A DNA stretch of 64,000 nucleotides, from IMG/VR virus record IMGVR_UViG_3300023257_000007, positions 186,001 through 250,000 of that record. One strand, given 5' to 3'. The notes under the pieces were generated by a model. That model saw only the letters and a program-made list of their open reading frames with translations. It did not search any database and had not been told where the DNA came from. Below, in pieces: positions 20,560 to 42,357 of this stretch; the first letter of the stretch is position 1; each line of letters begins with the position of its first letter. The position numbers and the translations under genes are program-made.

Positions 20560-20683
20560 ATTTAATATATATTAAAGAATATAAATCCATTATGAAAAAT
20601 TTAATGACATGAAAATTGGTTTAAAAAGAAAGCACATCATCGAAGCACTTAAAATGAATTTATTATAATAATATATAAAATAT

Positions 20684-21289
20684 ATGAGAAACCTTAAAAC
20701 ATATGAAGATTATTTATATGAATATTCTGAAATTAAAAAAGAAGAAACACTACACATATACACAGATGGTAGTTATTCTGACCAAGTTTCAAATTATAAA
20801 ATAAGTTATAGTGCAGTTTTAATAACAGAAAACGAAAACGAATATTATCTTTCAGGACATATGGTTAGAAAATATGTTGATCAATTATTTGGTTCTCAAA
20901 CACCATTAAATAGTTTAACTGCTGAATTAGTGGCTTTAAATCAACTACTTTATATTATGAATAGCTATAAAATATCTAATAAAAATCTTCTAATTTATAC
21001 AGATTGTGAATCTGTTTACGAACACTTCAATGAATCTTTGCCTGTAATAAAGAAAAAAAATATGTCTAAATTAGTCAATAATATAAAACATAATATTAAC
21101 AATTTAAAAAATAAAAAAAATATCGTTGATATTAGATGGATTCCAGGACATAAACAAATATACGGTAATATGATAGCAAACTATCTAGCCAAAAAAGGTG
21201 AAGATATCAACACTTTTAAAATATATTTTAATATGGCAGATAGACATTTTAAAAATATGAAAGACTACGATTGGTTCAAAAAACTTTAA
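20684..21289 (+). CDS. rnhA: Ribonuclease HI
   Basis: IYTDGS, AEL.AL, IYTDCE, WIPGH, GN..AN.LAK motifs; extra MRNLKTYEDYLYE N-terminus. Confidence 0.85.
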   Translation: MRNLKTYEDYLYEYSEIKKEETLHIYTDGSYSDQVSNYKISYSAVLITENENEYYLSGHMVRKYVDQLFGSQTPLNSLTAELVALNQLLYIMNSYKISNKNLLIYTDCESVYEHFNESLPVIKKKNMSKLVNNIKHNINNLKNKKNIVDIRWIPGHKQIYGNMIANYLAKKGEDINTFKIYFNMADRHFKNMKDYDWFKKL

Positions 21290-27293: not shown

Positions 27294-28367
27294 CTAAGAA
27301 ACTACATACTTATATAACTTCTTGTGATAGTCAAGATCCTTATAATCACTAACCATCAAATAAACTATATAACAAAAATAAAATATTTTATCAATCATCA
27401 AACTTCTATCAACATCACCACCAACAAACCTAAATTCAACATAATCATCATCAATAATTCTTCTTAAATTCATACCGAAAGTTTTAGAACCTAGATTATT
27501 AGATAATTCCTTTAATTCGATTTCCAAAAACTTCTCAACATCATCTACAAAATTATCACTACTAAACTCAGGAAACTCACCCTTCTTTATCTTATCTAAA
27601 AATGTCTGACAATATGCAGTAAATTGTCTATATTCAATATCTTTATAAATATAGGGTTTTTCACTAGTCTCAACCATCATAATTAAACCCTTTACAAAAT
27701 TCCATCTATCTACATCTTTATTTAAACCAATATTAATATGAATAGAAGTGTGATTATTCATATACCAATAATCCTGTTTATTAAAATCATCATAAAAATC
27801 ATTAATCATTTCTAAACCTTTATCCAAACCAGTCACATATTTCTTAGGTGAAAATTCAACCCCCCTAGATAAAGTTTGATCAAACTCAAATTTTAAATCA
27901 TCATAATATTTAGTATAAAAATTAGGCAAATATTCACCAATTTTATTTATAACATATCCAAGATTTTCAAATTCATCTTCTTCCTCTTCCTCATATTCAA
28001 TTTCTAAATTATCAATAATATTAATCATATTAGAAACTATATATTCCTCTGTCTTATTCTTACAACTATTCATAATATTATCCAAAGAATCAGATATATT
28101 TCCAAAATCAAACTGATTATAAACTATCTGTTTTAAAAAATCTAAATCATAATCAATTTTATCAATGTCTAATCCAACACGTAATTTTTTAAATATTTCT
28201 AATAAATACTTATCCTCTACTTTAGAAACTTTAACATTCTCATCATCTGTTTCTAATTCAAATTCAAAAGCTAATGTAAAATGTTCTACCATACCAGAAT
28301 CAAATAATAATTTCTTATCTTTTCTATTAAATTCTAGTAATTGTTTATATGTTATAAGATATTTCAT
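27294..28367 (-). CDS. Putative amidoligase enzyme (COOH-NH2 ligase family)
   Basis: FTLAFEFELE, D.TL.RGVEFSP, TSIHINIG, KTFGMN, VEFRFVGG motifs; MKYLITYKQLLE N-terminus. Confidence 0.75.
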   Translation of the reverse strand: MKYLITYKQLLEFNRKDKKLLFDSGMVEHFTLAFEFELETDDENVKVSKVEDKYLLEIFKKLRVGLDIDKIDYDLDFLKQIVYNQFDFGNISDSLDNIMNSCKNKTEEYIVSNMINIIDNLEIEYEEEEEDEFENLGYVINKIGEYLPNFYTKYYDDLKFEFDQTLSRGVEFSPKKYVTGLDKGLEMINDFYDDFNKQDYWYMNNHTSIHINIGLNKDVDRWNFVKGLIMMVETSEKPYIYKDIEYRQFTAYCQTFLDKIKKGEFPEFSSDNFVDDVEKFLEIELKELSNNLGSKTFGMNLRRIIDDDYVEFRFVGGDVDRSLMIDKIFYFCYIVYLMVSDYKDLDYHKKLYKYVVS

Positions 28368-28375: not shown

Positions 28376-28398
28376 TATATATTAAAAATTAATATATA
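28376..28398. promoter_or_regulatory. Back-to-back AATATATA late-promoter-like motifs
   Basis: TATATATT at 28376-83 (minus) and AATATATA at 28391-98 (plus); same octamer upstream of genes at 5345, 8667, 19310, 20566, 20670, 30582, 30603, 62313. Confidence 0.65.
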
Positions 28399-28403: not shown

Positions 28404-28796
28404 ATGAAAAATTTTTTAAATTTTATAAATAATAATCACGAATATTCAAATAATGAAATGAATAAAATTATTAAATTCATTGGCAAATTATGTAAATATG
28501 AAAACAAAAAAGCAAACGCAATATTCAATTTTAACATATCAAAAAATATACTTAATGATACAGATTTTAATGCATCAGTAAGATCAAATAACATATATTC
28601 AAACGATATAAAACAAGTTACAAAAATACTTGATAAAGTATGCGAAAAATTAAATATGTATCCAACAATAAATATTATGATTAATACATTTGGTAGATCA
28701 ACAAATTATAATATTAACTGTACATTTGAATTTACAGAAAAAAATAAATTAGACATTCTTGCAACTATAGAAGGAAATAAATTAGGACTATTATAA
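28404..28796 (+). CDS. KMGLL-tag family protein
   Basis: Ends IEGNKLGLL. Confidence 0.8.
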   Translation: MKNFLNFINNNHEYSNNEMNKIIKFIGKLCKYENKKANAIFNFNISKNILNDTDFNASVRSNNIYSNDIKQVTKILDKVCEKLNMYPTINIMINTFGRSTNYNINCTFEFTEKNKLDILATIEGNKLGLL

Positions 28797-29141
28797 ATGA
28801 AACATCTTAAAAAATATAACGAAGAGAAAATAGAAAATAAATGGAAAAATACAATAGTAATTTATGAATCTTACTCGGATTCATGGGTATATGTAGATGG
28901 TTCATTGATATCAGAATGGTCTGTTACCATATTTGATATATTATTAATATTATCAGAGGATAATGTTAATATATTGAAATATAAAATATCAATGTTAACA
29001 GATCATTTTCCTCAAAATATAATTGATCATTTAAACGATCACCCAGAACAAGAATTTCCAATGTATGATTTAGATATATATGAACAAGAAATAATAAAAA
29101 GAAAAGCAGAAAAAGAAGGACAAAAAATGGGTCTGTTTTAA
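28797..29141 (+). CDS. Dual-motif protein (MKHLKKYNE ... EGQKMGLF)
   Basis: Both terminal motifs present. Confidence 0.8.
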   Translation: MKHLKKYNEEKIENKWKNTIVIYESYSDSWVYVDGSLISEWSVTIFDILLILSEDNVNILKYKISMLTDHFPQNIIDHLNDHPEQEFPMYDLDIYEQEIIKRKAEKEGQKMGLF

Positions 29142-29142
29142 A

Positions 29143-29466
29143 ATGAAACATATTTCAACATATAACGAATACTTACAAACACCCTTAAATTTATCAATAC
29201 CAATATAGAAGATAATGATAAATTTACAAATTACCTAGAACAATCAAACCTAATATCAAAAAATTCTTTATTTAGAACATATCATAAAGGATGTATATAT
29301 CATACATTTTTAATATCAATTATAGATAATCATTCTTAAAAATTAGTTGTTCAAACCCAGATAATGTATCTGGGTTTGAACAAAAAGGAGTAAATGAAAT
29401 ATTATTTGATCCAGATATAATTATATAATTATAAGATTAGAAGCAAATAAAATGGGATTATTATGA
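29143..29466 (+). pseudogene. Broken dual-motif gene (MKHISTYNE ... LEANKMGLL)
   Basis: N- and C-motifs in different frames with stops between; contains a perfect 17-bp inverted repeat. Confidence 0.7.
29347..29383. repeat. Perfect 17-bp inverted repeat with 3-nt loop
   Basis: TTGTTCAAACCCAGATA-ATG-TATCTGGGTTTGAACAA. Confidence 0.95.
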
Positions 29467-29744
29467 AATATTTAAAGACATACAACGAATCAAAATATAA
29501 ACCATCATATACTGCACGCCCAATGCCAGATAAATATCGGCTTAGATGTGAATATTTAATAGATAAATACGGTAAACTAAATACAAATAATAAAATTACA
29601 CATTTATCAGAAGAATCAGAAATTTTACAAATAGATATAAATGATGATTATAGATTAGATATTTTTAAAACTACTGATAAATCGTTACTTAATATGAGAG
29701 AATTAGAAATGAAATTACAAGCAAAAGAATTAGGATTGTTATAG
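29463..29744 (+). CDS. Dual-motif protein (MKYLKTYNE ... QAKELGLL)
   Basis: Both terminal motifs present. Confidence 0.8.
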   Translation: MKYLKTYNESKYKPSYTARPMPDKYRLRCEYLIDKYGKLNTNNKITHLSEESEILQIDINDDYRLDIFKTTDKSLLNMRELEMKLQAKELGLL

Positions 29745-29806
29745 ATTTAATGAAAAGGGGAATTTATATTATAATATATTTAATGTATCATAATTTAGCA
29801 CCTTTT

Positions 29807-30192
29807 TTATAATAATCCCATTTGATTTGCCTGTTTAACATTATCGAGTGATATACCAACATTTTTTTCTAACCAATTTTCAATTGTAATATAATTGTAT
29901 TTTTTATAATCAGGATCTTGTAAATTATTTTGTAAATATACCATACTACCCCCAATTAAAATCATAATCTTTAACATTAAATATTTCATAATTTTCTTGA
30001 GAAATAGATATCAGAAAATAACTAGGTCTACCACCAGAATAACGAAAAATATAATCATAATCTATATCAATATTATAAAAATCATCATATAATGAAAATA
30101 ATACAAAATTAATACATAATATATGTATACATAATATTAAAACAGATGATATAAAATTATTAGAAAAAATATGTTGTTTTAAGGTATTTTAT
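29807..30192 (-). pseudogene. Broken dual-motif gene ((M>I)KYLKT ... ANQMGLL)
   Basis: ATA AAA TAC CTT AAA ACA overlaps upstream stop; frameshifts near the start and at a G5 run (~29950); the track ORF 29807..29989 is only the 3' frame. Confidence 0.6.
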
Positions 30193-30575
30193 AACAATCC
30201 CATTTTTTTCGCAGTTAATATTTTTTCTATTTCAGAACCTAATAAAAATGCATTTAATTTTATGAGTATAGAATTATCTAAATCATCATATTGTACATTT
30301 CTTTCATATTCACTATCTGATAAATTATAATAATAAATAATACCGGTTGTATTAATATTACTTTGATAAATGTCAAATTTTAAATCATCTAATTTTATTT
30401 TTATTAAATTAGTAGATGTAGATCTACCATAAAGATCAGATATTCTATTATTACCATCATTATTTTTTTCACCGTATTTATCTAGTAAATATAAACACCT
30501 ATTAAATACTTTATCAGGCATTAAATAACAATGATTTCTATTAATTTTTTCTAAATATGATTTCAAATATCTCAT
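30189..30575 (-). CDS. Dual-motif protein (MRYLKSYLE ... TAKKMGLL)
   Basis: Both motifs; YLLDKYG..N shared with 29463..29744. Confidence 0.8.
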   Translation of the reverse strand: MRYLKSYLEKINRNHCYLMPDKVFNRCLYLLDKYGEKNNDGNNRISDLYGRSTSTNLIKIKLDDLKFDIYQSNINTTGIIYYYNLSDSEYERNVQYDDLDNSILIKLNAFLLGSEIEKILTAKKMGLL

Positions 30576-30616
30576 TAATCTTATATATTAAATTTAAATA
30601 AGAATATATAAATAAT

Positions 30617-30919
30617 ATGAAATACCTTAAAACATATAATGAAAATAAATCATTTAATGATAAAGTTAATATGATTAAAAAAATAGTAGACACCGTTGGT
30701 AAAACTGATGATAGAGGTAAAATTTTAAATTTAAACTATAAATCAAAAGGTTCTAAAACCTATCTTTTAAAAATTCAAGATACATGCTGGATAAGTATTG
30801 AGATGATAGGTACAAGATTTTTAAGAAATTTAGATTCTAGAGTAATTGAATCTATATATAAAGAATTAAAAGAAAAATACCCAGAGTTTTTTATGGGAGA
30901 TAAATTAGGTATTTTATAA
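30617..30919 (+). CDS. Dual-motif protein (MKYLKTYNE ... MGDKLGIL)
   Basis: Both motifs; AATATATA at 30603. Confidence 0.8.
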   Translation: MKYLKTYNENKSFNDKVNMIKKIVDTVGKTDDRGKILNLNYKSKGSKTYLLKIQDTCWISIEMIGTRFLRNLDSRVIESIYKELKEKYPEFFMGDKLGIL

Positions 30920-31420
30920 AATAAAAGTCTTAAAAAATTTTCCAAAAAAATTTTCCAAAAAAATTTTAGAAACAAAATCCCAGTTTCTAAGTTATACTTT
31001 GTAACGGATACCCAAACGTAATTATATTATATATTATATTATATACACTTTTTAAATTTACACTTTCTGACAAATACTTAATATCTACTACAAAACAGTT
31101 ACTAATTTAAATGAACACTACTTACTCTATAAAAACAAACTTACTATTCTGTGATATAAAAAGTACTCTATTTACTATAAAATAGTTAATACCTTATATA
31201 GATAATACTTTATTTTAAAATAAACTTCTTTATATTATTTAAAATAAACTTCTTCATGACCTCATATATTCACTATATCTATATATGTAGATAGGTGGCC
31301 CGTGAGCTATTTTTACTTATTATTATTAATCTTAAATTAGGAGGATTTTTATAATCCTTATCTATTATTATTTTTTTGTCATGGATCATTGTGACATCTT
31401 TTTTTATTTTTATATTAAGG
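30920..31420. other. AT-rich intergenic region at GC-skew switch (candidate replication origin)
   Basis: No credible ORF; AAAAAATTTTCC x2-3 and TTAAAATAAACTTCTT x2 repeats; + strand C-rich before and G/T-rich after. Confidence 0.45.
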
Positions 31421-31440
31421 TTGCTTTCCTTATCTTTGTA

Positions 31441-32013
31441 ATGAATAAAAATTATAATGAGATGGAAAATTATTTTAAAATTGAACATGGAAGAAAGGTT
31501 GAGACATACACACCTAAAGATACATATGTATTAACATGGAATGAAAGACATGGTGATGCTGATCAAAGTATGCCTACATCTATGACTATACACAGTATGG
31601 ATGAGTTATGGTTCATGTTATGGTTTAGTAAGTGGTTAGATAGATACAGACAGTATAGTGACTTAGATGAGTATAGTAAGGTACTTAATAAGTATAGTAA
31701 GGAGTTATTGGGTAGTAGTTGGTATATAACTGATTGGTGTAGTGATGTGTATGATCATGATTGTATATATTCTAGTTGTTATTGTGGTGTGGATGCCATG
31801 AAGTTATATTATTATGATGAGCATGGTGTTAAGTATGAAGAGGAGATTGATGGTAGTACATATATATCTTTAGTGAAGATGGGATATAAGTTAGATTGTT
31901 GGTTCATTGATAAGTATCCACATATAGCTAATGAGTTACAGGGTATGATATGTGATGCTGCATTGGAAGATAAGAAGGATGTTATTGAGGCTAATAAAAT
32001 GGGGTTGATATGA
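31441..32013 (+). CDS. KMGLL-tag protein, GDAD/YYYD family
   Basis: Likely start 31441 after TATCTTTG promoter; ends IEANKMGLI. Confidence 0.8.
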   Translation: MNKNYNEMENYFKIEHGRKVETYTPKDTYVLTWNERHGDADQSMPTSMTIHSMDELWFMLWFSKWLDRYRQYSDLDEYSKVLNKYSKELLGSSWYITDWCSDVYDHDCIYSSCYCGVDAMKLYYYDEHGVKYEEEIDGSTYISLVKMGYKLDCWFIDKYPHIANELQGMICDAALEDKKDVIEANKMGLI

Positions 32014-32342
32014 TAGATAAGAATATAGTTATAGTATCGTATAGTAAAGAGGAGTTTAATTATGTATTGAATCTATTTAAATCTAGGGAGTTCAGTAGGT
32101 CTACGATTGATTCGTATCTACGTTACGTTAATGATGATGGTCATTATAATGATTATGTATATCCTATTGCATTAATTGTGAGGTTTAAATTAATGTCAGC
32201 AACGTGGCAGTATAAAGATATGTGGGATCATATTAATGATTTATTAGATAGGGGTGAGGTTGATAGTGTTATTGATTGTAAAGATTTCAAAGAGATGGGT
32301 GGTGATAATTATATTGAAGGTATTAAATTAGGTTTACTTTAA
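32010..32342 (+). CDS. KMGLL-tag family protein
   Basis: Ends IEGIKLGLL. Confidence 0.8.
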   Translation: MIDKNIVIVSYSKEEFNYVLNLFKSREFSRSTIDSYLRYVNDDGHYNDYVYPIALIVRFKLMSATWQYKDMWDHINDLLDRGEVDSVIDCKDFKEMGGDNYIEGIKLGLL

Positions 32343-32371
32343 AGTTTAGAAGGTATTCCTTATCTTTGTAT
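32341..32371 (+). promoter_or_regulatory. 31-bp repeated sigma-A promoter unit AAAGTTTAGAAGGTATTCC[GT]T[AG]TCTTTGTAT, copy 1
   Basis: Near-identical copies at 34574, 35324, 39812; contains the TAnnTTTG -7 element. Confidence 0.85.
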
Positions 32372-32414
32372 TGAATATAATTTAAAGAATAGAAAATGAT
32401 AAAAGGAATAAGTA

Positions 32415-32732
32415 ATGACATATAAGGTATTGATTAAGGTTCGTAATGAATCTGAATGGATATCATGTTGTGATATGTTGTATAGTCATGGTTATCGATG
32501 GCAAGACAATTGTATGGACTCAAAGAAGATACATGGATATAAGTTGATAAGTGAAGGTGATATATATTTAGTTATATATAATCATACTGACCCTCATCAT
32601 CATGATGATCGTTTATTTTATAATACTAATGTTAATGTTGATATTTATGGGCCGGATGTTATTATAATTAATTATGTTGAAGGTATGGATTTACATGAGA
32701 TAATAGAAGTTAATAAATTGGGATTAATATGA
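32415..32732 (+). CDS. KMGLL-tag protein, subfamily A
   Basis: IKVRNESEWISCC.MLYSHGY.W; ends IEVNKLGLI. Confidence 0.8.
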   Translation: MTYKVLIKVRNESEWISCCDMLYSHGYRWQDNCMDSKKIHGYKLISEGDIYLVIYNHTDPHHHDDRLFYNTNVNVDIYGPDVIIINYVEGMDLHEIIEVNKLGLI

Positions 32733-33064
32733 TAGTATTTAGTAAAGATATAAAGAAAATAAATATTAAGGTTCGTAATGAATCTGAATGGGTATCATGT
32801 TGCAATATGTTGTATAGTCATGGTTATCATTGGAATGTTGAGTCTGATTTTATGGAGATATATTCTGAATGTTTAGAAACTGCTAAGGAATATATTAAGA
32901 CTTATGCAATAAATGATGGTATATATTTAGTTGTTTATAATGATAATAGTGGACGGTTATATTATAATTATAAATATAAGACTGATGGTATAATAAATCT
33001 TGATTGGTATGATGGTATGGATTTACATGAGATAAATGAAGCTAATAAATTGGGGTTAATATGA
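32729..33064 (+). CDS. KMGLL-tag protein, subfamily A
   Basis: Close tandem paralog of 32415; ends NEANKLGLI. Confidence 0.8.
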   Translation: MIVFSKDIKKINIKVRNESEWVSCCNMLYSHGYHWNVESDFMEIYSECLETAKEYIKTYAINDGIYLVVYNDNSGRLYYNYKYKTDGIINLDWYDGMDLHEINEANKLGLI

Positions 33065-33366
33065 AAGAGAAGATATACATAATATTAAATAATATAGATG
33101 ATTGGATTAATTGTTGTAATCAATTAGACAATGAGGGATATTTTTGGGCAAGAAGTAGTGACTCATATAAAGATAAATATCATAAATGTAAAACTTTCGG
33201 TAATCCTGAAAATTATATAGTAATAGGTCATAATGAGTATGATGATAATCGTTTATATTATGGTAATATATATAATGATAAGAAGTTTGATGGTATTATT
33301 TTATATTGGGATGCTGATGTAGATTTAGAAAGTTATTTTGCAGGTTTAAAAATGGGATTATTATAA
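33061..33366 (+). CDS. KMGLL-tag protein, subfamily A (distant)
   Basis: W..CC..L...GYFW; ends FAGLKMGLL. Confidence 0.8.
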   Translation: MKEKIYIILNNIDDWINCCNQLDNEGYFWARSSDSYKDKYHKCKTFGNPENYIVIGHNEYDDNRLYYGNIYNDKKFDGIILYWDADVDLESYFAGLKMGLL

Positions 33367-33476
33367 TAATATTTTCATGTTTGACCAGGGAGAATTTAGG
33401 TTGGAGGAAAGGGGATATTTTTATTTGGTGAAGGTTTGTTGTGTATTTGTGTATAAATTAAAATGTAAAAAAGATT

Positions 33477-33857
33477 ATGATAAAATGGATTAATATAAGG
33501 CTGGAAGGTTATGGTAAAGGTAAAGGTAAAGGTAAAGGTAAGAAGAAACTGAATAAGATGGTTATGCGTAAATTGTTACATCAAATTGATTGTAAGGTTG
33601 GTTTTCGTATTAAGGATGGTGGATGGAAACCAGTTTTAAATAGTTTAAAAGAATATAAGCATTATAAATATATATGGATTGCTATATGTCCTTTTGGTAA
33701 AGATATGGCTGCGGATTATCATGAAAATAAAGAAGAATGGGAGAGTTATAAAGACGGTATTGAGGCGGATGAAGCTGAGGTATGGTTGAGTTGGGAAGAG
33801 TTTATGGATTTAGATATTCAGATGATTGTTAATGGTTCTAAAATGAATTTATTATGA
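33477..33857 (+). CDS. KMGLL-tag protein with (GK)5 microsatellite
   Basis: (GGTAAA)4 at 33513-33536; ends VNGSKMNLL. Confidence 0.75.
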   Translation: MIKWINIRLEGYGKGKGKGKGKKKLNKMVMRKLLHQIDCKVGFRIKDGGWKPVLNSLKEYKHYKYIWIAICPFGKDMAADYHENKEEWESYKDGIEADEAEVWLSWEEFMDLDIQMIVNGSKMNLL

Positions 33858-34246
33858 AAGATATAAAGTGGATAAATATAATGTTAGACTGGGATAAGTT
33901 TAAGTGGGAACAATTCCATGATGTTGTTGATTATTATAAAGAGTTATTTCCTAAATTAGATTGGACAACTGTTCAAACTGAGATACAGATACATGATAAA
34001 ATTCGAAATGAATCTGTTTTTGATATTTTAGGTTTATCTATATGTTTGGAACATGATAGTAATGATTTTAATATTAATAATTGTGAAAATACTATAAATA
34101 ATTGGCATCCTGTTATATTTAAGTATGGTATTGGTGATGATTTATATGACAAGCAAACTGGTATTGAAATAATTGTTAAATATAGTAAAGATTTCCGTGA
34201 AGAGATTGAGTTTTATTTAGAGGGTTCTAAAATGGGTTTATTATGA
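33854..34246 (+). CDS. KMGLL-tag protein, subfamily E
   Basis: WINI..DWD.F.W similar to 60161; ends LEGSKMGLL. Confidence 0.8.
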   Translation: MKDIKWINIMLDWDKFKWEQFHDVVDYYKELFPKLDWTTVQTEIQIHDKIRNESVFDILGLSICLEHDSNDFNINNCENTINNWHPVIFKYGIGDDLYDKQTGIEIIVKYSKDFREEIEFYLEGSKMGLL

Positions 34247-34575
34247 AAAAAACAATAATATTTTTACATAACAATAAGGATTTGGGCAACTTGTTCATGT
34301 ATTTACATGTTATTGGATGCAAATGGTCTAGTGGTAGACCTATTATAATAGATAGTGAAATACAAAGATTTAATTTATCTTGTTCTAGATCTAAATCTGT
34401 TGCAATTATCGTTGATGATGGTAGTCTTACTTATGTATCAAATAAGAAAGATATTGTTTATAGTTATATATCTGGTGATAAATTTAAATATTATGATCAT
34501 TATGAGTATGTAGATTTTGATAAGGAGTTTGATATTGATGTAACTATTAATGGTAATAAGATGGGATTACTTTAA
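34243..34575 (+). CDS. KMGLL-tag protein, subfamily B
   Basis: YLH.IG.KW, YDHYEY; ends INGNKMGLL. Confidence 0.8.
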   Translation: MKKTIIFLHNNKDLGNLFMYLHVIGCKWSSGRPIIIDSEIQRFNLSCSRSKSVAIIVDDGSLTYVSNKKDIVYSYISGDKFKYYDHYEYVDFDKEFDIDVTINGNKMGLL

Positions 34576-34604
34576 AGTTTAGAAGGTATTCCGTGTCTTT
34601 GTAT
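34574..34604 (+). promoter_or_regulatory. 31-bp repeated promoter unit, copy 2
   Basis: Overlaps the stop of the tagged gene; SD AGGAGG downstream. Confidence 0.8.
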
Positions 34605-34627
34605 TATAATTAAAGGAGGAAACAAAA

Positions 34628-34963
34628 ATGAAAATGATAATATATGCACATAATGACGAAGATATTTATAAGTTATCAACTTATTTACATTATATTGGAA
34701 TTAAATGGCAAACTGAAATTTTTATTATGAATGATGGTGAAATGACAATAGATTGTAATAGAGCTGAATCTAAATCTATTGCATTTTGTGTTAAAAATAA
34801 TCGTGTGTCATATATGAATGATGGTGGTTCTTTTGGTGGTGATGTTTATAATTTTTTCAAAAGGCAACCATATGAATGTTATGACCATTATGAGTATATT
34901 GAATTTGATAAGGAGTTTGGTGTTGATATGGTTTTAGAATCAATAAAGATGGGTTTATTATGA
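34628..34963 (+). CDS. KMGLL-tag protein, subfamily B
   Basis: Ends LESIKMGLL. Confidence 0.8.
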   Translation: MKMIIYAHNDEDIYKLSTYLHYIGIKWQTEIFIMNDGEMTIDCNRAESKSIAFCVKNNRVSYMNDGGSFGGDVYNFFKRQPYECYDHYEYIEFDKEFGVDMVLESIKMGLL

Positions 34964-35325
34964 AAAAAACAATAATATATGTACATAGTGATGAGGATAT
35001 GATTAATTTATTAAGTTATTTACATTTTGTTGGAGTTACATGGCATGGCTCTGCTATTATAAAAGATGATGATAGTTCCGATAATTTTTTTAATGCCGAT
35101 GCCAGATATATAGATATTAGTTGTAAAAAAACGGGAACTGTTGGATTTTGTATTGATCAAGATGATTATATTACATATATGGATGATGGTACTTTTAAAG
35201 GCGAGAATGTTTATGAATATTTCGGTAGAGATTTTATGGAGTATGATCATTATGAGTATGATGAATATGTTGAAAAGTTTGATATTGAACCACTCATAAA
35301 TGGAATAAAGATGGGTTTACTTTAA
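34960..35325 (+). CDS. KMGLL-tag protein, subfamily B
   Basis: Ends INGIKMGLL. Confidence 0.8.
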   Translation: MKKTIIYVHSDEDMINLLSYLHFVGVTWHGSAIIKDDDSSDNFFNADARYIDISCKKTGTVGFCIDQDDYITYMDDGTFKGENVYEYFGRDFMEYDHYEYDEYVEKFDIEPLINGIKMGLL

Positions 35326-35354
35326 AGTTTAGAAGGTATTCCGTATCTTTGTAT
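35324..35354 (+). promoter_or_regulatory. 31-bp repeated promoter unit, copy 3
   Basis: Overlaps the stop of the tagged gene. Confidence 0.85.
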
Positions 35355-35377
35355 TATAATTAAAAAGGAGAAGAAAA

Positions 35378-35632
35378 ATGAAAAAGAAACAAAATAAAAA
35401 AGAAGAGAGTAAATATCAATACAGAAGTGATACTGCTGTTAGGGTTGAAGAAACTGAATATAGTGTAAATGAGTATGACGAATGGGATCGCATAGTATTT
35501 TATTTATGGAAGAAGAGTGGTTATTGGTCTGTGAATGTTTTTGCTCCTGTAACTGATGGTAAAAGGGTTTCATTAGAACCTTTACAAGTAATTCATAAGT
35601 ATTGGACATCTTATAATAAATTATCAATATGA
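35378..35632 (+). CDS. Hypothetical protein
   Basis: 84 aa with promoter and AAGGAG upstream. Confidence 0.75.
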   Translation: MKKKQNKKEESKYQYRSDTAVRVEETEYSVNEYDEWDRIVFYLWKKSGYWSVNVFAPVTDGKRVSLEPLQVIHKYWTSYNKLSI

Positions 35633-35895
35633 AAAGATTAAATATATTTGTAAGAAGTGGATTACAGCAAACGTTGTTTCTACATTATTTATATACTAAT
35701 GGTTATAGTTATAAAGATAGAAAGGATCTTTATTGGAAATTTACTAATGGTTCAGGTGCTATTGTGGTTAATGTAATTGATAAAATAATATTAGGTGGTA
35801 ACACAGGTTGGTTTGCAACACAATCACATATGAATGTAAAAGAATTTGTTGATAAGGCGTGGGAATTTGAAAGTATGAGGATTGGTGTATTATGA
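35629..35895 (+). CDS. KMGLL-tag variant protein
   Basis: YLYTNGYSY; ends FESMRIGVL. Confidence 0.75.
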   Translation: MKRLNIFVRSGLQQTLFLHYLYTNGYSYKDRKDLYWKFTNGSGAIVVNVIDKIILGGNTGWFATQSHMNVKEFVDKAWEFESMRIGVL

Positions 35896-36131
35896 TTAAG
35901 GAATATCATATATGTATTATAAATAAAAAGGAGAAAAAAATGCTAACAATATTAACAATATTATTAATATGGAATCAATTTAGTGGTTGGTTTAGAAAGA
36001 TGTTTTGTAAAATTGGTTTACACACATGGATTAAAGTCTATTCACATAATGAAAAAGGTTGGCATATAAAGGAAAAGAAATGTAGAATATGTAATAAGGA
36101 GGTAAAAAATGATAAAAATAATAGAAAATAA
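35892..36131 (+). CDS. Small membrane / Cys-His protein
   Basis: FCKIGLHTW...KCRICNK pattern. Confidence 0.65.
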   Translation: MIKEYHICIINKKEKKMLTILTILLIWNQFSGWFRKMFCKIGLHTWIKVYSHNEKGWHIKEKKCRICNKEVKNDKNNRK

Positions 36132-36618
36132 AACACAAACTAAAAGAATTGAACCTTATTATAGGTTAAAATTTAGTTACATGATTGGTGATGCTGATGG
36201 TGACACTACAGAGAAGATTGATATTCCTCTTAACAATCCATATGTCGAAAGAGTTGTTGATGTTTTAAATAATTGTGATACACCTAAAGGTCATTGGGGT
36301 ATGATATTAGACTCTGAACATTTCACTAAGTTATTGAATCAGGGTAAAATGACACAGAGTGATTATAATTTTTGTAAAGTGGTTGTATTTGGTGATGACA
36401 TTGATGAACACATGGAAGAGTTTTTCAGCAAGGAAAGAATTGAGGCTGACAAATTAAAATTATTGGAGATAACTGGCGATGAAAAATCATACGCTTATGA
36501 ATTTGAAGAGGCTTGTATTACTTCGATTGGACATAGTTTCGCAGTTTTTGAAGGTATTGATTTATATTATATTGATGAATATGGAGTAAAACATGAGACC
36601 AAAATAGTTGATGATTAA
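36109..36618 (+). CDS. GDAD/YYYD family protein without tag
   Basis: IGDADGD and LYYIDEYGVKHE shared with 31441 and 52330; TAAGGAGGT SD upstream. Confidence 0.8.
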   Translation: MIKIIENKTQTKRIEPYYRLKFSYMIGDADGDTTEKIDIPLNNPYVERVVDVLNNCDTPKGHWGMILDSEHFTKLLNQGKMTQSDYNFCKVVVFGDDIDEHMEEFFSKERIEADKLKLLEITGDEKSYAYEFEEACITSIGHSFAVFEGIDLYYIDEYGVKHETKIVDD

Positions 36619-36692
36619 AACATTAAAATGGTAAGGAATTTCAGAAGGAGTTCCTTATCTTTGTATTAATATTAATTTAAAGAAGAAATAAA

Positions 36693-36920
36693 ATGATAAA
36701 ATATAAAATAACAGATGAAAAAATTGAAGTAGGCGACATTGTTGCTTATGGAATAACATGGAGAGAGAAACGTGTAAGAAAGCACGGTTATGTACTTGGT
36801 GTTTGGGAAGAATATTGGGATGAGGATTCACAGAAGTTTAGAAATAAGGTTGAATGTGTTGATAAAGATAATCATATAATTCGTAGTGAAGAATGGTTAA
36901 AAAAGGTGGTATTGATATGA
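36693..36920 (+). CDS. Small SH3/KOW-like hypothetical protein
   Basis: EVGDIV...HGYVLGV pattern; own promoter. Confidence 0.65.
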   Translation: MIKYKITDEKIEVGDIVAYGITWREKRVRKHGYVLGVWEEYWDEDSQKFRNKVECVDKDNHIIRSEEWLKKVVLI

Positions 36921-37222
36921 TAAAACGATATTATAAAATAGGAATAGATATTCCTGATAATAAATTTGTTAAGTTGATATCAGATCATTTATATTCTTTG
37001 GGTTATAAATGGTGTAGTGATTTTAGAGACGAATCTTTTTATGATAAAGTAACGAATGAATGTATAAGAAGTAATGTGCGTGGTATTGGTGTTGAATGTA
37101 ATGGTCGCATGAGTTACAATGTTGTTAAAAATCAAACTGAAAAGTGGTATTCTCTTGAAGAATATGTAATAAAATATGATTTAGTGATTGAATATGAAGG
37201 ATTAAAAATGGGTTTATTATGA
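36917..37222 (+). CDS. KMGLL-tag protein, subfamily C
   Basis: HLYSLGYKW, GIGVE..GR.SYNV; ends YEGLKMGLL. Confidence 0.8.
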   Translation: MIKRYYKIGIDIPDNKFVKLISDHLYSLGYKWCSDFRDESFYDKVTNECIRSNVRGIGVECNGRMSYNVVKNQTEKWYSLEEYVIKYDLVIEYEGLKMGLL

Positions 37223-37335
37223 GAAAGAGAAAACGAATCAAGGAAAATATTGACTATTTGTTATTTGGAATGGATTGTGCATTGATAGTATTATTTGTAT
37301 TATTCATAGTATTAATTATAATTTAGGAGGAAAAA

Positions 37336-37686
37336 ATGAGAAAAATATATTTAGCAACAAATTATTTCACAGCGTTAACCCCGCTTGATGATGATAACAA
37401 TTTATTAAAATTAGAAAGAGGTAAAGATCCTGTTATTATTTGTACCCTTGAGAAATATCTGGAAGATGTTGATAACACAATAATCACAGGTAACATATTA
37501 AGATTAGAAATAATTGCAAAAACAGATGATGGTTGGATAATTGAACAAGAATTTATAACACCGGGAATGTTAGAGAGTTTGAATTGTAGAAAGATAAGTC
37601 TTGACTCACAATTTATTGAAACTTTAAATCGAAGCCAGAAAGTGGCTTTAGAGTTAAAGAATATAAATGAAAAATTGTCAAGGTAA
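37336..37686 (+). CDS. Hypothetical protein
   Basis: 116 aa, AGGAGG SD. Confidence 0.75.
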   Translation: MRKIYLATNYFTALTPLDDDNNLLKLERGKDPVIICTLEKYLEDVDNTIITGNILRLEIIAKTDDGWIIEQEFITPGMLESLNCRKISLDSQFIETLNRSQKVALELKNINEKLSR

Positions 37687-37854
37687 ATTTTTTTATTAAG
37701 TAGAATCACCGTATATTTGTATTATACAATTGAGAAGATAGAAAAAGAAGAGAAATAAACAGAATGATTTTTTAATTCAGAATAAAGTTCTTATCTTTGT
37801 ATAGACAAAAACAAGTAAACATAATATTAATTAATTTAAAAAACGAAAAACAAA

Positions 37855-38169
37855 ATGGCAAACAAAAAAGATTTAACAAACGCAATTGCAATAGCTACAG
37901 GCAAAACAAAAAAAGATAGCAAAGAATTAGTAAACGTCATAATGGCATCTATTAAATCTGAATTAAGTAACGGTGAAGGTTCTATCGTAAAATTAGTAAA
38001 CTTTGGAACATTTAAAGTAGTTAATCGAAAAGCAAGAAAAGGAAGAAATCCAAGGACTGGTGAATCAATTGATATCCCTGCAAAGAATGTAGTTAGATTC
38101 AAAGCTGGTAAAGGTCTTAAAGAAGCGGTTGATTATACTGCTGAAGAAAGAGAAGAATTAGGAATATAA
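37855..38169 (+). CDS. hup: HU family DNA-binding protein, copy 1
   Basis: NKKDL..AIA, L.NFGTF.V..RKARKGRNPRTGE.I.IPAK.VV.FK.GK.LKEAV; tail DYTAEEREELGI. Confidence 0.95.
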   Translation: MANKKDLTNAIAIATGKTKKDSKELVNVIMASIKSELSNGEGSIVKLVNFGTFKVVNRKARKGRNPRTGESIDIPAKNVVRFKAGKGLKEAVDYTAEEREELGI

Positions 38170-38192
38170 GAAATAAAACTCCTGAAATATCG

Positions 38193-38219
38193 AAGCCACC
38201 TGGAGAGGTGGCTTTTTTT
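38193..38219 (+). terminator. Intrinsic terminator
   Basis: AAGCCACCT-GGAG-AGGTGGCTT plus T tract. Confidence 0.9.
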
Positions 38220-38246
38220 ATTTGAAAAAATTCCTTATATTTGTAT

Positions 38247-38567
38247 ATGAATAACGAAAAATATATAAGGTTTAAGGTAAAAACTCTATCAGATAGTAAG
38301 AGTATTCAAGAATTTTTATTTTCTTTAGGATATATGTGGTGTTCAGAAAATAGGAAAGAATATTATTATATGAATTTTGAAACGTCTGATATTTTATTAT
38401 GTCTTGAGAGTGACTTTAATCCTAATATAGATCATATTTTTCATGGTGATGTAGAGATATTAAATTATGATAAAAGATGGATGGATAAGATAATAAAATC
38501 TTATGATATGAGTAATTATAAAGATTTTATTCAATATAAAAATGCAAAACAACTGGGATTAATTTAA
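38247..38567 (+). CDS. KMGLL-tag protein, subfamily D
   Basis: IQEFLFSLGY.W; ends KNAKQLGLI. Confidence 0.8.
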   Translation: MNNEKYIRFKVKTLSDSKSIQEFLFSLGYMWCSENRKEYYYMNFETSDILLCLESDFNPNIDHIFHGDVEILNYDKRWMDKIIKSYDMSNYKDFIQYKNAKQLGLI

Positions 38568-38597
38568 TATTAAGAACAAACTCCGTATCTTTACACT

Positions 38598-38903
38598 ATG
38601 AAAAAACATGAAAAATTTATATTATTTAAGGTTGATACTTCAAGGGAAAGTAAGGAAATTCAAGAATTTTTGTTTTCTTTAGGTTATTCTTGGCGTGGAG
38701 ATAATAATATGGAATATTTCTCTGTTGAAATTGGGGCTTATATTTTATTATGTGTTGATAGTAATAATATTAAGAGCAAAAATTGTATTTTTTATGGAAA
38801 TGATAAAATGCAATATGATCAAGAACTTATAAAATCTTATAACATGAATAATTATAAAGATTCTTTATGTTTTATAGAATCATTTAAATTGGGATTATTT
38901 TAA
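38598..38903 (+). CDS. KMGLL-tag protein, subfamily D
   Basis: Paralog of 38247; ends IESFKLGLF. Confidence 0.8.
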   Translation: MKKHEKFILFKVDTSRESKEIQEFLFSLGYSWRGDNNMEYFSVEIGAYILLCVDSNNIKSKNCIFYGNDKMQYDQELIKSYNMNNYKDSLCFIESFKLGLF

Positions 38904-38936
38904 AATTGAGAACAAACTCCGTATCTTTACATAGTT

Positions 38937-38991
38937 AAAGGGCGGAGAATTTTTATAGGTTCTGGGAGAGTAGACTCCAACTTGCGATATA
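38937..38991 (+). ncRNA. Five-copy small RNA candidate, copy A
   Basis: AAGGGCGGAG...GAGAGTAGACTCCAACTTGCGATATA directly after a TATCTTTA promoter; no ORF follows. Confidence 0.6.
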
Positions 38992-39042
38992 TTTTTTTTA
39001 ACACAATTTTTATTTCTTAGAAGTAATCCGTATCTTTGTTAT

Positions 39043-39474
39043 ATGAAAATGAAAGTATTATATATTAAAGCTGAAAACATGAAAGATGGTGATTTTGACA
39101 TTATGTTAAAATTTGTTAATAATAATAAAAATTTAGATTATTATTTAACAGGTATAAATATGGGGGGTATTATGAGAACATTTATATGTATAGCCGTAAA
39201 TGATGATAATTATAATGAGGTTAAAGAAAAATTATTCTCTAAATATAATACACCATCACATATTACTGATTTTCAAAATTATGAAGATTATAAATATCCC
39301 TATTTATCAATTGAAATATCAATGGAAAATGAACATGCAGATCATTTAACTATTCATCCTTTGAATGATGATGATGTAGATGTTAAAAATTTTGAAATAA
39401 TTTATAGTAATATTGATGACATATTTGATGATATTGATATGCATATAACTACAAAAAAACTTGGTTTATCTTAA
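39043..39474 (+). CDS. KMGLL-tag variant protein
   Basis: Ends ITTKKLGLS. Confidence 0.75.
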   Translation: MKMKVLYIKAENMKDGDFDIMLKFVNNNKNLDYYLTGINMGGIMRTFICIAVNDDNYNEVKEKLFSKYNTPSHITDFQNYEDYKYPYLSIEISMENEHADHLTIHPLNDDDVDVKNFEIIYSNIDDIFDDIDMHITTKKLGLS

Positions 39475-39489
39475 CTAAAAAAAATAATT

Positions 39490-39810
39490 ATGAGAAAATT
39501 TAATTGTATTAAAATAGAAAATGAAGAACATTTAAATGAATGTTATAAAAAGATAATTGATCTTAAAACACATTATCCATATAACACTTTTGTTGATAGA
39601 TTTATTATGATAAAGGGTTATTGTATTGGTTTTGAAATAGAAGAAATAGAAGAAGGAAGATTAATTTTAACATTTTTAACTGATAATGATCTTCAACGAT
39701 TTGATGAATCAAATGAATTAGCTTTTAATTGTAATTATTTTAATGATATTGATTCTTTTGTTGAATATCATAAGATTTATTTTGATTGTAGATCATTAGG
39801 GGTTTTATAA
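39490..39810 (+). CDS. KMGLL-tag variant protein
   Basis: Ends FDCRSLGVL. Confidence 0.75.
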   Translation: MRKFNCIKIENEEHLNECYKKIIDLKTHYPYNTFVDRFIMIKGYCIGFEIEEIEEGRLILTFLTDNDLQRFDESNELAFNCNYFNDIDSFVEYHKIYFDCRSLGVL

Positions 39811-39811
39811 G

Positions 39812-39842
39812 AAAGTTTAGAAGGTATTCCGTATCTTTGTAT
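39812..39842 (+). promoter_or_regulatory. 31-bp repeated promoter unit, copy 4
   Basis: Identical core to copy 3; drives the SprT-like gene. Confidence 0.85.
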
Positions 39843-39863
39843 AAATATTAAAATAATATAATT

Positions 39864-40325
39864 ATGGAATTAGATAAAGCAAGAATAAAAATGAGAGAAT
39901 TGTTATCAAAACATGGTCTTGATAATTGGAGTTTTGATTTTGATAGAGCAGTTAGACGTTTAGGTCAATGTGTTTGGAAAAAGAATAGTATCATGACTCG
40001 AAAAATTACTATGTCTAGAATTATGACTGAAAGTAGAACTGATAAAGAAGTTATTAATACAATGTTACATGAAATAGCACACGCAATAGATTTTGAAACA
40101 AGGGGTAGAAGTGCTCATGATGATGTTTGGAGATCAATTGCATTGAGTATTGGTTGTGATGGTAATAGATCTAGTAATGTTGATGTTGAGGTTTCAGAAA
40201 AGAATTATAAGTGGTTGGCTATATGTCCAGAGCATGGTGTTTTGGGTGGATGGCAAAGAAAACCAAAAGATAATAAAATGTGTAAAAAATGTAAAAGTAA
40301 AATCATAATAAAGGAAAATAAATAA
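39864..40325 (+). CDS. SprT-like zinc metallopeptidase
   Basis: RRLGQC, TMLHEIAHA (HExxH), H...W...A..IGC, C-terminal Cys cluster. Confidence 0.88.
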   Translation: MELDKARIKMRELLSKHGLDNWSFDFDRAVRRLGQCVWKKNSIMTRKITMSRIMTESRTDKEVINTMLHEIAHAIDFETRGRSAHDDVWRSIALSIGCDGNRSSNVDVEVSEKNYKWLAICPEHGVLGGWQRKPKDNKMCKKCKSKIIIKENK

Positions 40326-40326
40326 C

Positions 40327-41154: not shown

Positions 41155-41162
41155 AACAAATT

Positions 41163-41369
41163 ATGTGGATAACAATTGGAATAATAATAGGATTAGTAAT
41201 AGGTGGTTGGTTAGGATATCAGGCTTGTATGGCAAAATATAGACCTACAGAATTACTTAAATTAGCAAAAATACAAACTGAAATGATTTCAGGTGAAATA
41301 ACACCGGAAAAGGCTTTAAAAGAGATACATCAAATTGAAATTGAACACCCTGAATTGAAAAAGAAATGA
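41163..41369 (+). CDS. Small membrane protein
   Basis: N-terminal TM helix with GxxxG. Confidence 0.7.
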   Translation: MWITIGIIIGLVIGGWLGYQACMAKYRPTELLKLAKIQTEMISGEITPEKALKEIHQIEIEHPELKKK

Positions 41370-41689
41370 AAAAGTATAAATTTATAACAGAAAGTGATTA
41401 TGGTGATTTGCAACTCATCATTTATTTTGAAGATAGAGATGAATCTATTAAAGTTCAAAATGAAATGATAGAACGTGGTTATTTAAAAATCACAGAGACA
41501 AATACACAAGATAAAGATTTATATCCATTTTCTGTTTGGTTTGAACCTAAAAATAAAATAATGAATGGTGGTCAAAAGAATTCTGAATATATGTTAAGGT
41601 ATGGTAGATCATTACATTCTGATATATTTATGGAGTATATAGATAATCTGGAAGCATTATTTGAGTCTTTAAAAATGGGTTTGTTATAA
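41366..41689 (+). CDS. KMGLL-tag family protein
   Basis: Ends FESLKMGLL. Confidence 0.8.
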   Translation: MKKYKFITESDYGDLQLIIYFEDRDESIKVQNEMIERGYLKITETNTQDKDLYPFSVWFEPKNKIMNGGQKNSEYMLRYGRSLHSDIFMEYIDNLEALFESLKMGLL

Positions 41690-42322: not shown

Positions 42323-42357
42323 CACAATGTAACCTCCTTTCACATTGAATTAGTACT

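What the first reader, a model, noticed from the sequence alone, without database searches (positions are those of the whole stretch)
28404..30919. Cluster of proteins carrying both a T4 capsid-targeting-like N-terminus and the C-terminal tag
Seen: 28797, 29143 (relic), 29463, 29807 (relic), 30189, 30617 and distant 61961 start MK[HY]L[KS][TKS]Y[NL]E and end in the KMGLL tag; 28404 has the tag and a looser start. These genes sit behind AATATATA motifs, not TAnnTTTG promoters. Established: T4 internal proteins IPII/IPIII begin MKTYQEFIAE, a capsid-targeting sequence cleaved by gp21 after Glu; they are injected with the DNA, and IPI* inhibits GmrSD. Inference: a subset of tagged proteins is made late, packaged and injected, while the rest is expressed early, so one tag is delivered by two routes.
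Basis: partly seen in the sequence, partly recalled or inferred. Interest (0 to 1): 0.8.

Follow-up and report, generated by a model that had tools for sequence, protein, structure and literature searches.

The report
Portable end motifs on huge-phage proteins
A small late-gene island in an uncultured salt-lake huge phage encodes fast-evolving little proteins with a conserved 10-residue start and a conserved tail; these two portable "end labels" recur on many unrelated proteins in AT-rich huge phages, may be loading or docking signals like the T4 capsid-targeting sequence, and have not been tested experimentally.

Summary
Six ORF starts match the core motif [KR][HY][LI][KS][TKS]Y[NL]E. All six follow an initiating Met, and shuffled sequence gives none. 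Three of these ORFs lie on the minus strand. 29143-29466 is a true pseudogene. 29807-29989 is not a convincing relic.

The N-motif is not tied to the tag. In the window it also heads an RNase H, a GS-like enzyme and a 153-aa protein. In IMG/VR it starts hundreds of unrelated ORFs in AT-rich, often 100-640 kb, phage contigs. About 44% of those carriers also end in K[FY]N[ILMV] (odds ratio 18, p 2e-45). That ending is the wider relative of this phage's KMGLL tail.

Codon usage points to selection on the peptide. AlphaFold leaves residues 1-10 unpacked in two different folds. N-motif genes sit directly behind a TTTAATATATA box that structural genes share, or in operons behind one. None follows a Bacteroidetes-type TAnnTTTG promoter.

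The lineage is T4-derived, so a CTS-like loading signal is the best reading (about 0.4). It fails strict T4 CTS criteria, and nothing shows packaging or cleavage. The "two delivery routes" idea is untested.

The parts
28376..28398 (.). Divergent pair of late-type boxes: AATATATA at 28391-28398 (+), 13 nt before the ATG at 28404, and at 28376-28383 (-), 16 nt before the ATG of 27294-28367(-)
28404..28796 (+). 130-aa ORF with a loose N-terminus (MKNFLNFINN) and the full extended tag (...DILATIEGNKLGLL). First gene of the plus-strand late unit
   Evidence: No homolog outside its own population
28797..29141 (+). 114-aa ORF starting MKHLKKYNEE and ending ...EGQKMGLF. Operon-internal (TAAATG junction)
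29143..29466 (+). Pseudogene. The N-motif MKHISTYNEY and the tag EANKMGLL share a frame but are separated by several stops and frameshifts. Its stop overlaps the next ATG
29347..29383 (-). 17-bp-stem hairpin inside the relic, followed by a T-run on the minus strand. Terminator-like
29463..29744 (+). 93-aa ORF starting MKYLKTYNES and ending ...AKELGLL. Paralog of 30189-30575 and 30617-30919
29807..29989 (-). 60-aa ORF starting MKYLMLKIMILIGG (hydrophobic) and ending ...ANQMGLL. Tagged, without a full N-motif; its status as a relic is unproven
30189..30575 (-). 128-aa ORF starting MRYLKSYLEK and ending ...AKKMGLL
   Evidence: Atlas model pTM 0.61 with no informative neighbour
30582..30610 (.). 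Second divergent box pair: AATATATA at 30582-30589 (-) and 30603-30610 (+), each 14 nt before its ATG
30617..30919 (+). 100-aa ORF starting MKYLKTYNEN and ending ...GDKLGIL
61961..62320 (-). 114-aa ORF (61961-62305) starting MKYLSTYLEN and ending ...GNKMGLL. Its C-terminal half is homologous to early tagged families. It has its own AATATATA box at 62313-62320 and is embedded antisense in the early region
27294..28367 (-). Untagged N-motif carrier (MKYLITYKQLLEF). Conserved 357-aa enzyme, tentatively a glutamine-synthetase-like amidoligase. Orthologs exist with and without the prefix
20670..21289 (+). Untagged N-motif carrier (MRNLKTYEDY). RNase H, with residues 1-21 lying N-terminal to the RNase HI fold. 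Box at 20670-20677
2563..3024 (-). Untagged N-motif carrier ([12 protein letters not shown]), 153 aa, just downstream of a tail-fibre-like gene
31381..63335 (+). About 32 further tagged ORFs without the N-motif. Most belong to one diversified domain superfamily with a ...LxSLGYxW helix. They lie behind TAnnTTTG-type promoters or in operons

Best explanation
What is shown. 28.4-30.9 kb is a small island of lineage-specific, rapidly turning-over accessory genes, driven by two divergent late-type promoter boxes. Their products carry two separable, portable terminal peptides.
(1) An N-terminal decapeptide, MK[YH][LI]Kx[YF](N)E. It has Glu at position 8 or 9 in 93% of carriers. It is a flexible extension outside the folded domain and is selected as a peptide. 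It is found on many unrelated proteins of AT-rich, T4-derived huge phages.
(2) A C-terminal amphipathic helix ending [DE]hxxxhE[GSA]xK[ML]GL[LI]. This is the local form of a more widespread ...ExxhxAxKFN[IL] ending.
In other lineages the two ends are strongly coupled on the same proteins.

What is inferred. The N-peptide is most likely a docking signal that loads late accessory proteins into the assembling prohead, as the T4 capsid-targeting sequence does. It may be removed after the conserved Glu by the lineage's S77-type prohead protease. The C-terminal helix would be a second docking element for a shared but unknown partner. The AATATATA box 5-8 nt before the ATG would make these genes leaderless or nearly leaderless late mRNAs.
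For: - Non-random and strictly N-terminal.
- Portable across folds: RNase H, GS-like enzyme, HNH, P-loop kinase, C39+GNAT, LRR and ankyrin proteins, and an SH3-like family.
- Widespread. The pattern ATATATA-N5-8-ATGAAAYAYHTNAAR hit more than 118 IMG/VR stretches. Among 106 resulting ORFs, the residues the pattern did not specify were F/Y at position 7 in 93 and E/N at position 8 in 85. A further 150 non-seed carriers lay in the same loci.
- Peptide-level selection: synonymous codon use at motif positions equals background.
- Unpacked: pLDDT below 50 for residues 1-10 in two confident models of different folds.
- Dispensable add-on: orthologs of the 357-aa enzyme occur with and without it.
- Coupled to the C-terminal motif: 83/105/48/1106, odds ratio 18, p 2e-45. 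More double-motif proteins occur elsewhere in this phage and its relatives.
- Late context: near-ATG box enrichment, p 4e-5. The same box sits about 30 nt before three large genes in the tail/baseplate module. No N-motif gene has a TAnnTTTG box.
- T4-type background: baseplate wedge related to Lak, PTm1 and the 735-kb phage; T4-type TerL in a relative; group 2.2 phages are T4-derived with an S77 prohead peptidase, sigma factors and gp33 (PMC7824862).
- The T4 CTS is MKTYQEFIAE, cleaved once, and portable (PMC8442874).
Against: - There are no proteomic, cleavage or expression data. No RNA run was listed.
- The sequence is not the T4 CTS. The residue three before the Glu is Y or K, not L/I, and not the S/A/G of phiKZ-type sites.
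- Carriers are mostly acidic (median pI 5.1 against 6.0), unlike basic IPII/IPIII.
- About one ORF in ten in the sampled loci carries the motif. That is many proteins for one capsid to load.
- Enzymes such as RNase H are not obvious virion cargo.
- I did not find the prohead protease or capsid genes of this phage. They are not in the window or 10 kb to its left, and Pfam found none in the candidate PTm1 ORFs.
Confidence: 0.4

Rival explanations
1. The two ends are short docking motifs for a partner outside the virion. Candidates are a phage or host hub (for example the T4-type sliding clamp, a chaperone or an assembly factor), or each other (head-to-tail self-association). No packaging or injection is involved.
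For: - Both ends are portable and tightly coupled, which suits a common binding partner.
- K[ML]GL[LIF], including the QLGLI and KLGLF forms, resembles C-terminal clamp-binding peptides. This comparison rests on my own knowledge: bacterial QLxLF, Pol II QLGLF.
- Relatives of this group encode a clamp loader (PTm1).
- Most tagged proteins in this phage look early.
- Carriers include ordinary enzymes.
Against: - No partner has been identified.
- The KFN[IL] form does not fit the clamp consensus.
- The one-residue length difference between KFNI and KMGLL argues against a strict C-terminal carboxylate-anchored pocket.
- This reading does not explain why the N-motif is restricted to late-type promoters.
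Confidence: 0.28
2. The N-motif is a by-product of, or a requirement for, translating leaderless late mRNAs. It would act as an mRNA or nascent-chain feature next to the promoter box, perhaps linked to the phage-encoded ribosomal protein bS21, and not as a protein signal.
For: - The box lies 5-8 nt from the ATG in first genes, so the transcript would start at or next to the ATG.
- The motif consists of AT-rich codons.
- A phage bS21 gene lies 100 nt from the 357-aa carrier.
Against: - Synonymous codons vary as in the background. TAC is even enriched, and Leu/Ile use many codons.
- Substitutions are chemically conservative: Y/H, L/I, F/Y.
- Genes inside operons and arrays, whose starts overlap the upstream stop and which have no box, keep the motif.
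- Other near-box genes lack it (5450, 20122).
Confidence: 0.1
3. The conserved ends reflect how the genes arise, not what the proteins do. Arrays grow by duplication, and cassettes are exchanged by recombination between conserved gene ends, so the ends are homogenised while the middles diverge.
For: - Tandem arrays with overlapping stop and start (ATATGA/TTATGA), with nearly identical junctions within an array.
- A pseudogene in the cluster.
- Gly codons in the tag depart from background: 61% GGR against 24%.
Against: - The same peptide motifs persist across very divergent genomes with different codons.
- They occur on unrelated folds.
- The tag is present on terminal genes with no downstream neighbour (22 of 39).
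- Homologs of the GYxW domain elsewhere lack the tag, so the tag was added and then kept.
Confidence: 0.1
4. The ends are degrons or anti-degrons that time the stability of accessory proteins through host or phage Clp/Lon-type proteases.
For: - Hydrophobic C-terminal ends (GLL, FNI).
- Unstructured N-terminus.
- Some group 2.2 jumbo phages encode ClpP or ClpS (PMC7824862).
Against: - No similarity to known ssrA-type or N-end-rule signals. Met-Lys is not an N-degron start.
- The C-terminal motif is the end of a predicted helix, not a free tail.
Confidence: 0.07

Closest known systems
T4 capsid-targeting sequence of internal proteins IPI/IPII/IPIII (MKTYQEFIAE)
   Same: About 10 N-terminal residues. 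The core is Lys-Thr-aromatic-x-Glu with a nearby Phe/Tyr. It is carried by otherwise unrelated small proteins in a hyperplastic locus and is transferable between proteins. The lineage is T4-derived.
   Different: The sequence differs: MK-YL-KTYNE here, MKYIKKFE elsewhere. There is no L/I-x-E site. Carriers number in the dozens, are mostly acidic and include enzymes. Many also carry a conserved C-terminal motif, which T4 IPs lack. Packaging and cleavage have not been shown.
N-terminal propeptides of phiKZ/SPN3US-type head and ejection proteins (cleaved at S/A/G-x-Glu by a gp21-like protease)
   Same: Many head-internal proteins in giant phages are processed after Glu by an S77-family protease. 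Paralogous families are involved.
   Different: Those propeptides are long and not conserved as a decapeptide. The site rule is not met here.
Encapsulation peptides of bacterial microcompartments and cargo-loading peptides of encapsulins
   Same: Short terminal amphipathic peptides, joined by a flexible linker to unrelated cargo, that dock on the inside of a protein shell. Encapsulin peptides are C-terminal with G/L-rich cores. This comparison rests on my own knowledge.
   Different: No sequence relation was shown, and the shells and organisms differ. This is only an analogy for how such ends can work.
C-terminal sliding-clamp-binding peptides (bacterial QL[SD]LF; T4 gp45-binding tails of gp43, gp33, gp55)
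   Same: A very short hydrophobic peptide at the extreme C-terminus shared by functionally different proteins. The QLGLI and KLGLF variants occur in the window.
   Different: Position 1 is usually Lys, not Gln. The KFN[IL] relatives do not fit. No clamp interaction was tested.
Modular shuffling of small accessory genes in T4-type hyperplastic regions
   Same: Tandem small ORFs, rapid gain, loss and pseudogenisation, and conserved boundaries.
   Different: Here the conserved boundaries are coding and are selected as peptides.

Membership tests
T4-type capsid-targeting sequence (CTS) | Conserved peptide of about 10 residues at the extreme N-terminus of otherwise unrelated proteins | tested here: met
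T4-type capsid-targeting sequence (CTS) | Sequence matches MKTYQEFIAE | tested here: not met
   Only the K-T-Y/F-x-E core is shared. The consensus here is MK[YH][LI]Kx[YF](N)E (T4 sequence from PMC8442874).
T4-type capsid-targeting sequence (CTS) | Ends in a gp21 cleavage site (L/I-x-Glu) | tested here: not met
   Glu is present at position 8 or 9 in 93%. The residue three before it is Tyr (this phage) or Lys (the MKYIKKFE type). The gp21 site rule is from my own knowledge.
T4-type capsid-targeting sequence (CTS) | The peptide is outside the folded domain, as a cleavable extension would be | tested here: met
   pLDDT below 50 for residues 1-10 in two models. RNase H fold starts at residue 22. 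Orthologs occur without the prefix.
T4-type capsid-targeting sequence (CTS) | The genome encodes a gp21/S77 prohead protease and a scaffolding core | tested here: inconclusive
   Not found in the window or 10 kb to its left. Pfam found none among the PTm1 candidate ORFs. The literature assigns S77 to group 2 jumbo phages, including Lak-B8 and PTm1 (PMC7824862). A relative has a T4-type TerL.
T4-type capsid-targeting sequence (CTS) | Proteins are present in virions with the N-terminus removed, and are injected | not testable with these tools
   The phage is uncultured. No RNA run was listed, and there are no proteomic data.
T4-like late promoter (TATAAATA, gp55/gp33-dependent) | AT-only octamer upstream of structural and late genes and absent from early units | tested here: met
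   TTTAATATATA lies before three large genes in the tail/baseplate module (about 30 nt) and before 8 small genes (13-16 nt). Early units carry [CT][CG]GTATnTTTGT instead. The same box occurs in LR756502, LR745206 and IMG/VR contigs.
T4-like late promoter (TATAAATA, gp55/gp33-dependent) | Transcripts start a few nt downstream, late in infection | not testable with these tools
   No RNA data.
Sliding-clamp-binding C-terminal peptide | Pentapeptide Q-L-x-L-F/L at or near the C-terminus | tested here: inconclusive
   x[ML]GL[LIF] fits positions 2-5. Position 1 is Lys in 30 of 39 and Gln in 2. The KFN[IL] relatives do not fit.
Sliding-clamp-binding C-terminal peptide | Binds the clamp's hydrophobic cleft | not tested
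   No complex prediction or assay was available.

The most novel reading that the evidence does not exclude
AT-rich T4-derived huge phages use a two-ended address code on dozens of fast-evolving accessory proteins. The N-terminal decapeptide loads them into the prohead and is clipped after its Glu. The C-terminal helix (KFN[IL] or KMGLL) docks the delivered protein onto a shared hub in the infected cell. In this phage the C-terminal address was also copied onto an expanded early-expressed domain family. If so, the arrays are a large injected-effector repertoire comparable to secretion-system effectors.
Probability: 0.15. Interest if true: 0.9.

Novelty: new variant of a known kind. Interest (0 to 1): 0.68.

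Why it matters
Huge phages are mostly ORFans with no handle on function. A pair of short, recognisable end motifs that marks roughly a tenth of the ORFs in the sampled loci would give a simple sequence rule for picking out one functional class. These motifs appear on ankyrin, LRR, SH3-like, nuclease and kinase modules.

If the class is virion cargo, the repertoire of proteins injected with the DNA, which likely includes counter-defence factors, could be predicted directly from metagenomes. It would also provide a natural loading peptide for Bacteroidota-type phages. If it is not cargo, the motifs still point to an unknown hub used by many phage proteins.

I found no Pfam or PHROG family for the window's tagged proteins and the carriers I tested. 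No paper in the searched library contains any of the six N-motif strings I searched; KMGLL occurs only in four unrelated papers.

Tried and rejected
- Pfam and PHROGs on ten tagged proteins: nothing.
- Homolog search with 30617-30919: only itself. phmmer of all cluster proteins against every fetched locus: only identical copies.
- ESM Atlas for 61961 and 30189: unnamed viral clusters with low scores.
- Alternative genetic code as an explanation for the relic: rejected, because the breaks include frameshifts.
- N-motif as part of a longer conserved N-terminal domain: rejected, because residues 11-30 are unrelated among carriers.
- N-motif as a general bacterial feature: rejected. The genome scan gave scattered single hits in unrelated families.
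- Tag as an intrinsic end of the early GYxW domain: rejected, because homologs elsewhere lack it.
- GGR codons in the tag acting as a Shine-Dalgarno for a coupled downstream gene: no association (p 0.32).
- Cultured relatives as test beds: PTm1 and Flavobacterium phage MaF61 do not show the motif in the regions read. No GenBank phage matches the SH3-like double-motif protein.
I redid it with database homologs.
- RNA runs: none listed.
- Search for the prohead protease via PTm1 annotation and Pfam: not found.
Full report
**Source and setting.** The window has 23% GC and comes from an uncultured phage of a salt-lake metagenome. It corresponds to about 186-250 kb of the 348,222-bp contig IMGVR_UViG_3300023257_000007. 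The window holds a gp6-like baseplate wedge, tail-fibre-like genes, thymidylate synthase, RNA ligase, a ribosomal bS21 gene and nine tRNAs. The baseplate wedge is 45% identical to that of the 735-kb phage LR756501. It is more distantly related to Lak megaphages and Tenacibaculum phage PTm1. A relative (LR756502) has a T4-type large terminase. Iyer et al. (PMC7824862) place Lak-B8 and PTm1 in jumbo-phage group 2.2. That group is derived from T4-like ancestors and has a gp23-type capsid, an S77 prohead peptidase, phage sigma factors and a gp33 ortholog. The left arm of the window (to 28,367) is mostly minus-strand and includes the tail/baseplate module. From about 31 kb the genes are plus-strand, behind Bacteroidetes-type promoters. 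The extended box [CT][CG]GTATnTTTGT occurs 19 times on plus and once on minus.

**The observation.** The core [KR][HY][LI][KS][TKS]Y[NL]E occurs six times in the six-frame translation. Each time it follows an ORF-initial Met. Shuffles gave none. The carriers are 28797+, the pseudogene 29143-29466+, 29463+, 30189-30575(-), 30617+ and 61961-62305(-). All end in a variant of K[ML]GL[LF]. The pseudogene is genuine and contains a 17-bp-stem hairpin. 29807-29989(-) is an intact tagged 60-aa ORF that shares only MKYL. 29463, 30189 and 30617 are paralogs, and the rest are singletons. None has a homolog outside its own population.

**Promoter context.** A TTTAATATATA box lies 13-16 nt before the ATG of eight genes. 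Five of these carry the N-motif, and a sixth is 28404. The same box lies about 30 nt before three large genes in the tail/baseplate module. N-motif genes that lack their own box sit in operons behind one. No N-motif gene has a TAnnTTTG box. With a T4-like geometry, the near-ATG class would be leaderless or nearly so. This is an inference.

**The N-motif is neither local nor tied to the tag.**
- In the window it also heads an RNase H (fold begins at residue 22), a conserved 357-aa enzyme (27294-28367) and a 153-aa protein next to a tail-fibre-like gene.
- In 40-kb pieces of LR756502 and LR745206, many unrelated proteins of 67-797 aa start MK[HY][LI][KR]x[FY][EN]. None there ends in the tag.
They came from many contigs of 20-35% GC, often 100-640 kb. 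In 106 ORFs the residues the pattern did not specify were F/Y at position 7 (93) and E/N at position 8 (85).
- The same loci held 150 further carriers not selected by the pattern.
- Carriers include HNH, P-loop kinase, C39+GNAT, LRR, ankyrin and SH3-like proteins.

**Peptide or nucleotide signal?** Synonymous codon use at motif positions equals background. Substitutions are conservative. Array-internal genes without a box keep the motif. The selection therefore acts on the peptide. AlphaFold models of two different folds were confident overall. These were the SH3-like family (pLDDT 85) and the 357-aa enzyme (pLDDT 88.8, weakly glutamine-synthetase-like by Foldseek). Both left residues 1-10 below pLDDT 50. 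Orthologs of the enzyme occur with and without the prefix. The motif is a flexible, dispensable, portable extension.

**The tag.** In the window, 39 of 118 ORFs end in an extended motif [DE]hxxxhE[GSA]xK[ML]GL[LI]. Shuffles give about 1 tag-plus-stop against 38 observed. An exact-pattern scan found multiple copies only in this phage and three sister contigs. In other IMG/VR lineages, about 44% of N-motif proteins end in K[FY]N[ILMV], preceded by a similar helix (...ELExKIxANKFNI). These often form tandem arrays with overlapping stop and start (odds ratio 18, p 2e-45). The window holds bridging forms: ESNKFNLI, AGKLNLI and GSKMNLL. More double-motif proteins (MKYLKTYEN...KMGLL or KMGLY) lie elsewhere in this phage and its sisters. 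The tag-only early proteins are mostly one diversified domain family. Its homologs elsewhere, single or repeated up to eight times, lack the tag. The tag is therefore an added module. The tag-only early set is a local expansion.

**Interpretation.**
- Shown: two portable terminal peptides, their coupling, their distribution, and the promoter association.
- Inferred: function. The closest precedent is the T4 CTS (MKTYQEFIAE, cleaved once, transferable; PMC8442874). The T4-derived background makes a homologous or analogous prohead-loading signal the most likely single reading (about 0.4).
- Against strict membership: the sequence differs and there is no L/I-x-E site. Carriers are acidic and numerous. 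There are no virion or expression data.
- Rivals: a hub-docking role outside the virion, a translation-linked role, and pure cassette dynamics all remain open.

Noticed in passing
window 26992-27186 (-): Phage-encoded ribosomal protein bS21 (Pfam Ribosomal_S21 in the gene table), at the end of the late minus-strand arm, about 100 nt from the 357-aa N-motif carrier.
   Followed up: partly
window 34600-47000 (+), e.g. upstream of 34628, 35378, 37336, 41930, 44635, 45600, 46918: Early-type units combine a Bacteroidetes -7 box (GTATCTTTGTAT) with strong AGGAGG Shine-Dalgarno sequences. Late-box genes have no Shine-Dalgarno and almost no leader. This is notable because Bacteroidia ribosomes normally ignore Shine-Dalgarno sequences and the phage carries its own bS21.
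   Followed up: no
window 28376-28398, 30582-30610, 20564-20677, 62313-62320; also L006, L007, L012, L036, L120, L155: The TTTAATATATA box sits only 5-8 nt before the ATG in several distinct huge-phage lineages. This implies leaderless late mRNAs if it is a -10-type element.
   Followed up: partly
window 29347-29383: Perfect 17-bp-stem hairpin inside the pseudogene, followed by a T-run on the minus strand. It could be a terminator for the convergent minus-strand unit, or an inserted element that helped kill the gene.
   Followed up: no
window 42250-51050: Nine tRNA genes (Lys, Glu, Tyr, Pro, Phe, Arg, Gln, Met, Leu) interspersed with early-type promoters.
   Followed up: no
window 37855-38169, 45725-46159, 51802-52110: Three ORFs ending TAEER(E/A)ELG(I/L). 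37855-38169 carries a Pfam Bac_DNA_binding (HU-like) hit, and 51802-52110 shares its MAN(K/R)KDL start. They look like paralogous copies of a histone-like DNA-binding protein.
   Followed up: no
window, Gly codon of the 36 tags that have Gly at that position: The tag's Gly uses GGA/GGG in 61% of cases against 24% elsewhere in the same genes. This is not explained by an adjacent downstream start (p 0.32).
   Followed up: partly
window 32010-63335 and proteins P0076-P0135: The early tagged proteins share a domain (strand, then a helix ending LxSLGYxW). The ten family members I scanned, including multi-repeat proteins up to 1647 aa, match no Pfam family above its threshold.
   Followed up: partly
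L079, L110, L137, L053 (IMG/VR): A shorter N-terminal variant, MKI(x)(R/K)FNES, replaces MKYIKKFE on KFN[IL]-tagged proteins in some arrays. In several 'tag-only' ORFs the true start appears to be an internal MKY(L/I)K.
   Followed up: no
L109 (IMGVR_UViG_3300028299_000014): An array of nine paralogs with MKYIKLFEEIDFD(E/D)NDFDWEEE starts and no C-terminal tag. The N-motif is followed by an acidic-aromatic stretch.
   Followed up: no
L114 (IMGVR_UViG_3300028864_000541): LRR-type double-motif proteins flank three tail-fibre-like genes on the same strand. This places such arrays inside a late structural operon.
   Followed up: no
window 39864-40325 and 11135-12010: An SprT-like metallopeptidase in the early region, a trait noted for group 2.2 jumbo phages. 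The left (mostly minus-strand) arm holds a protein with a C-terminal metallo-endopeptidase/endolysin-type domain (PHROGs).
   Followed up: no
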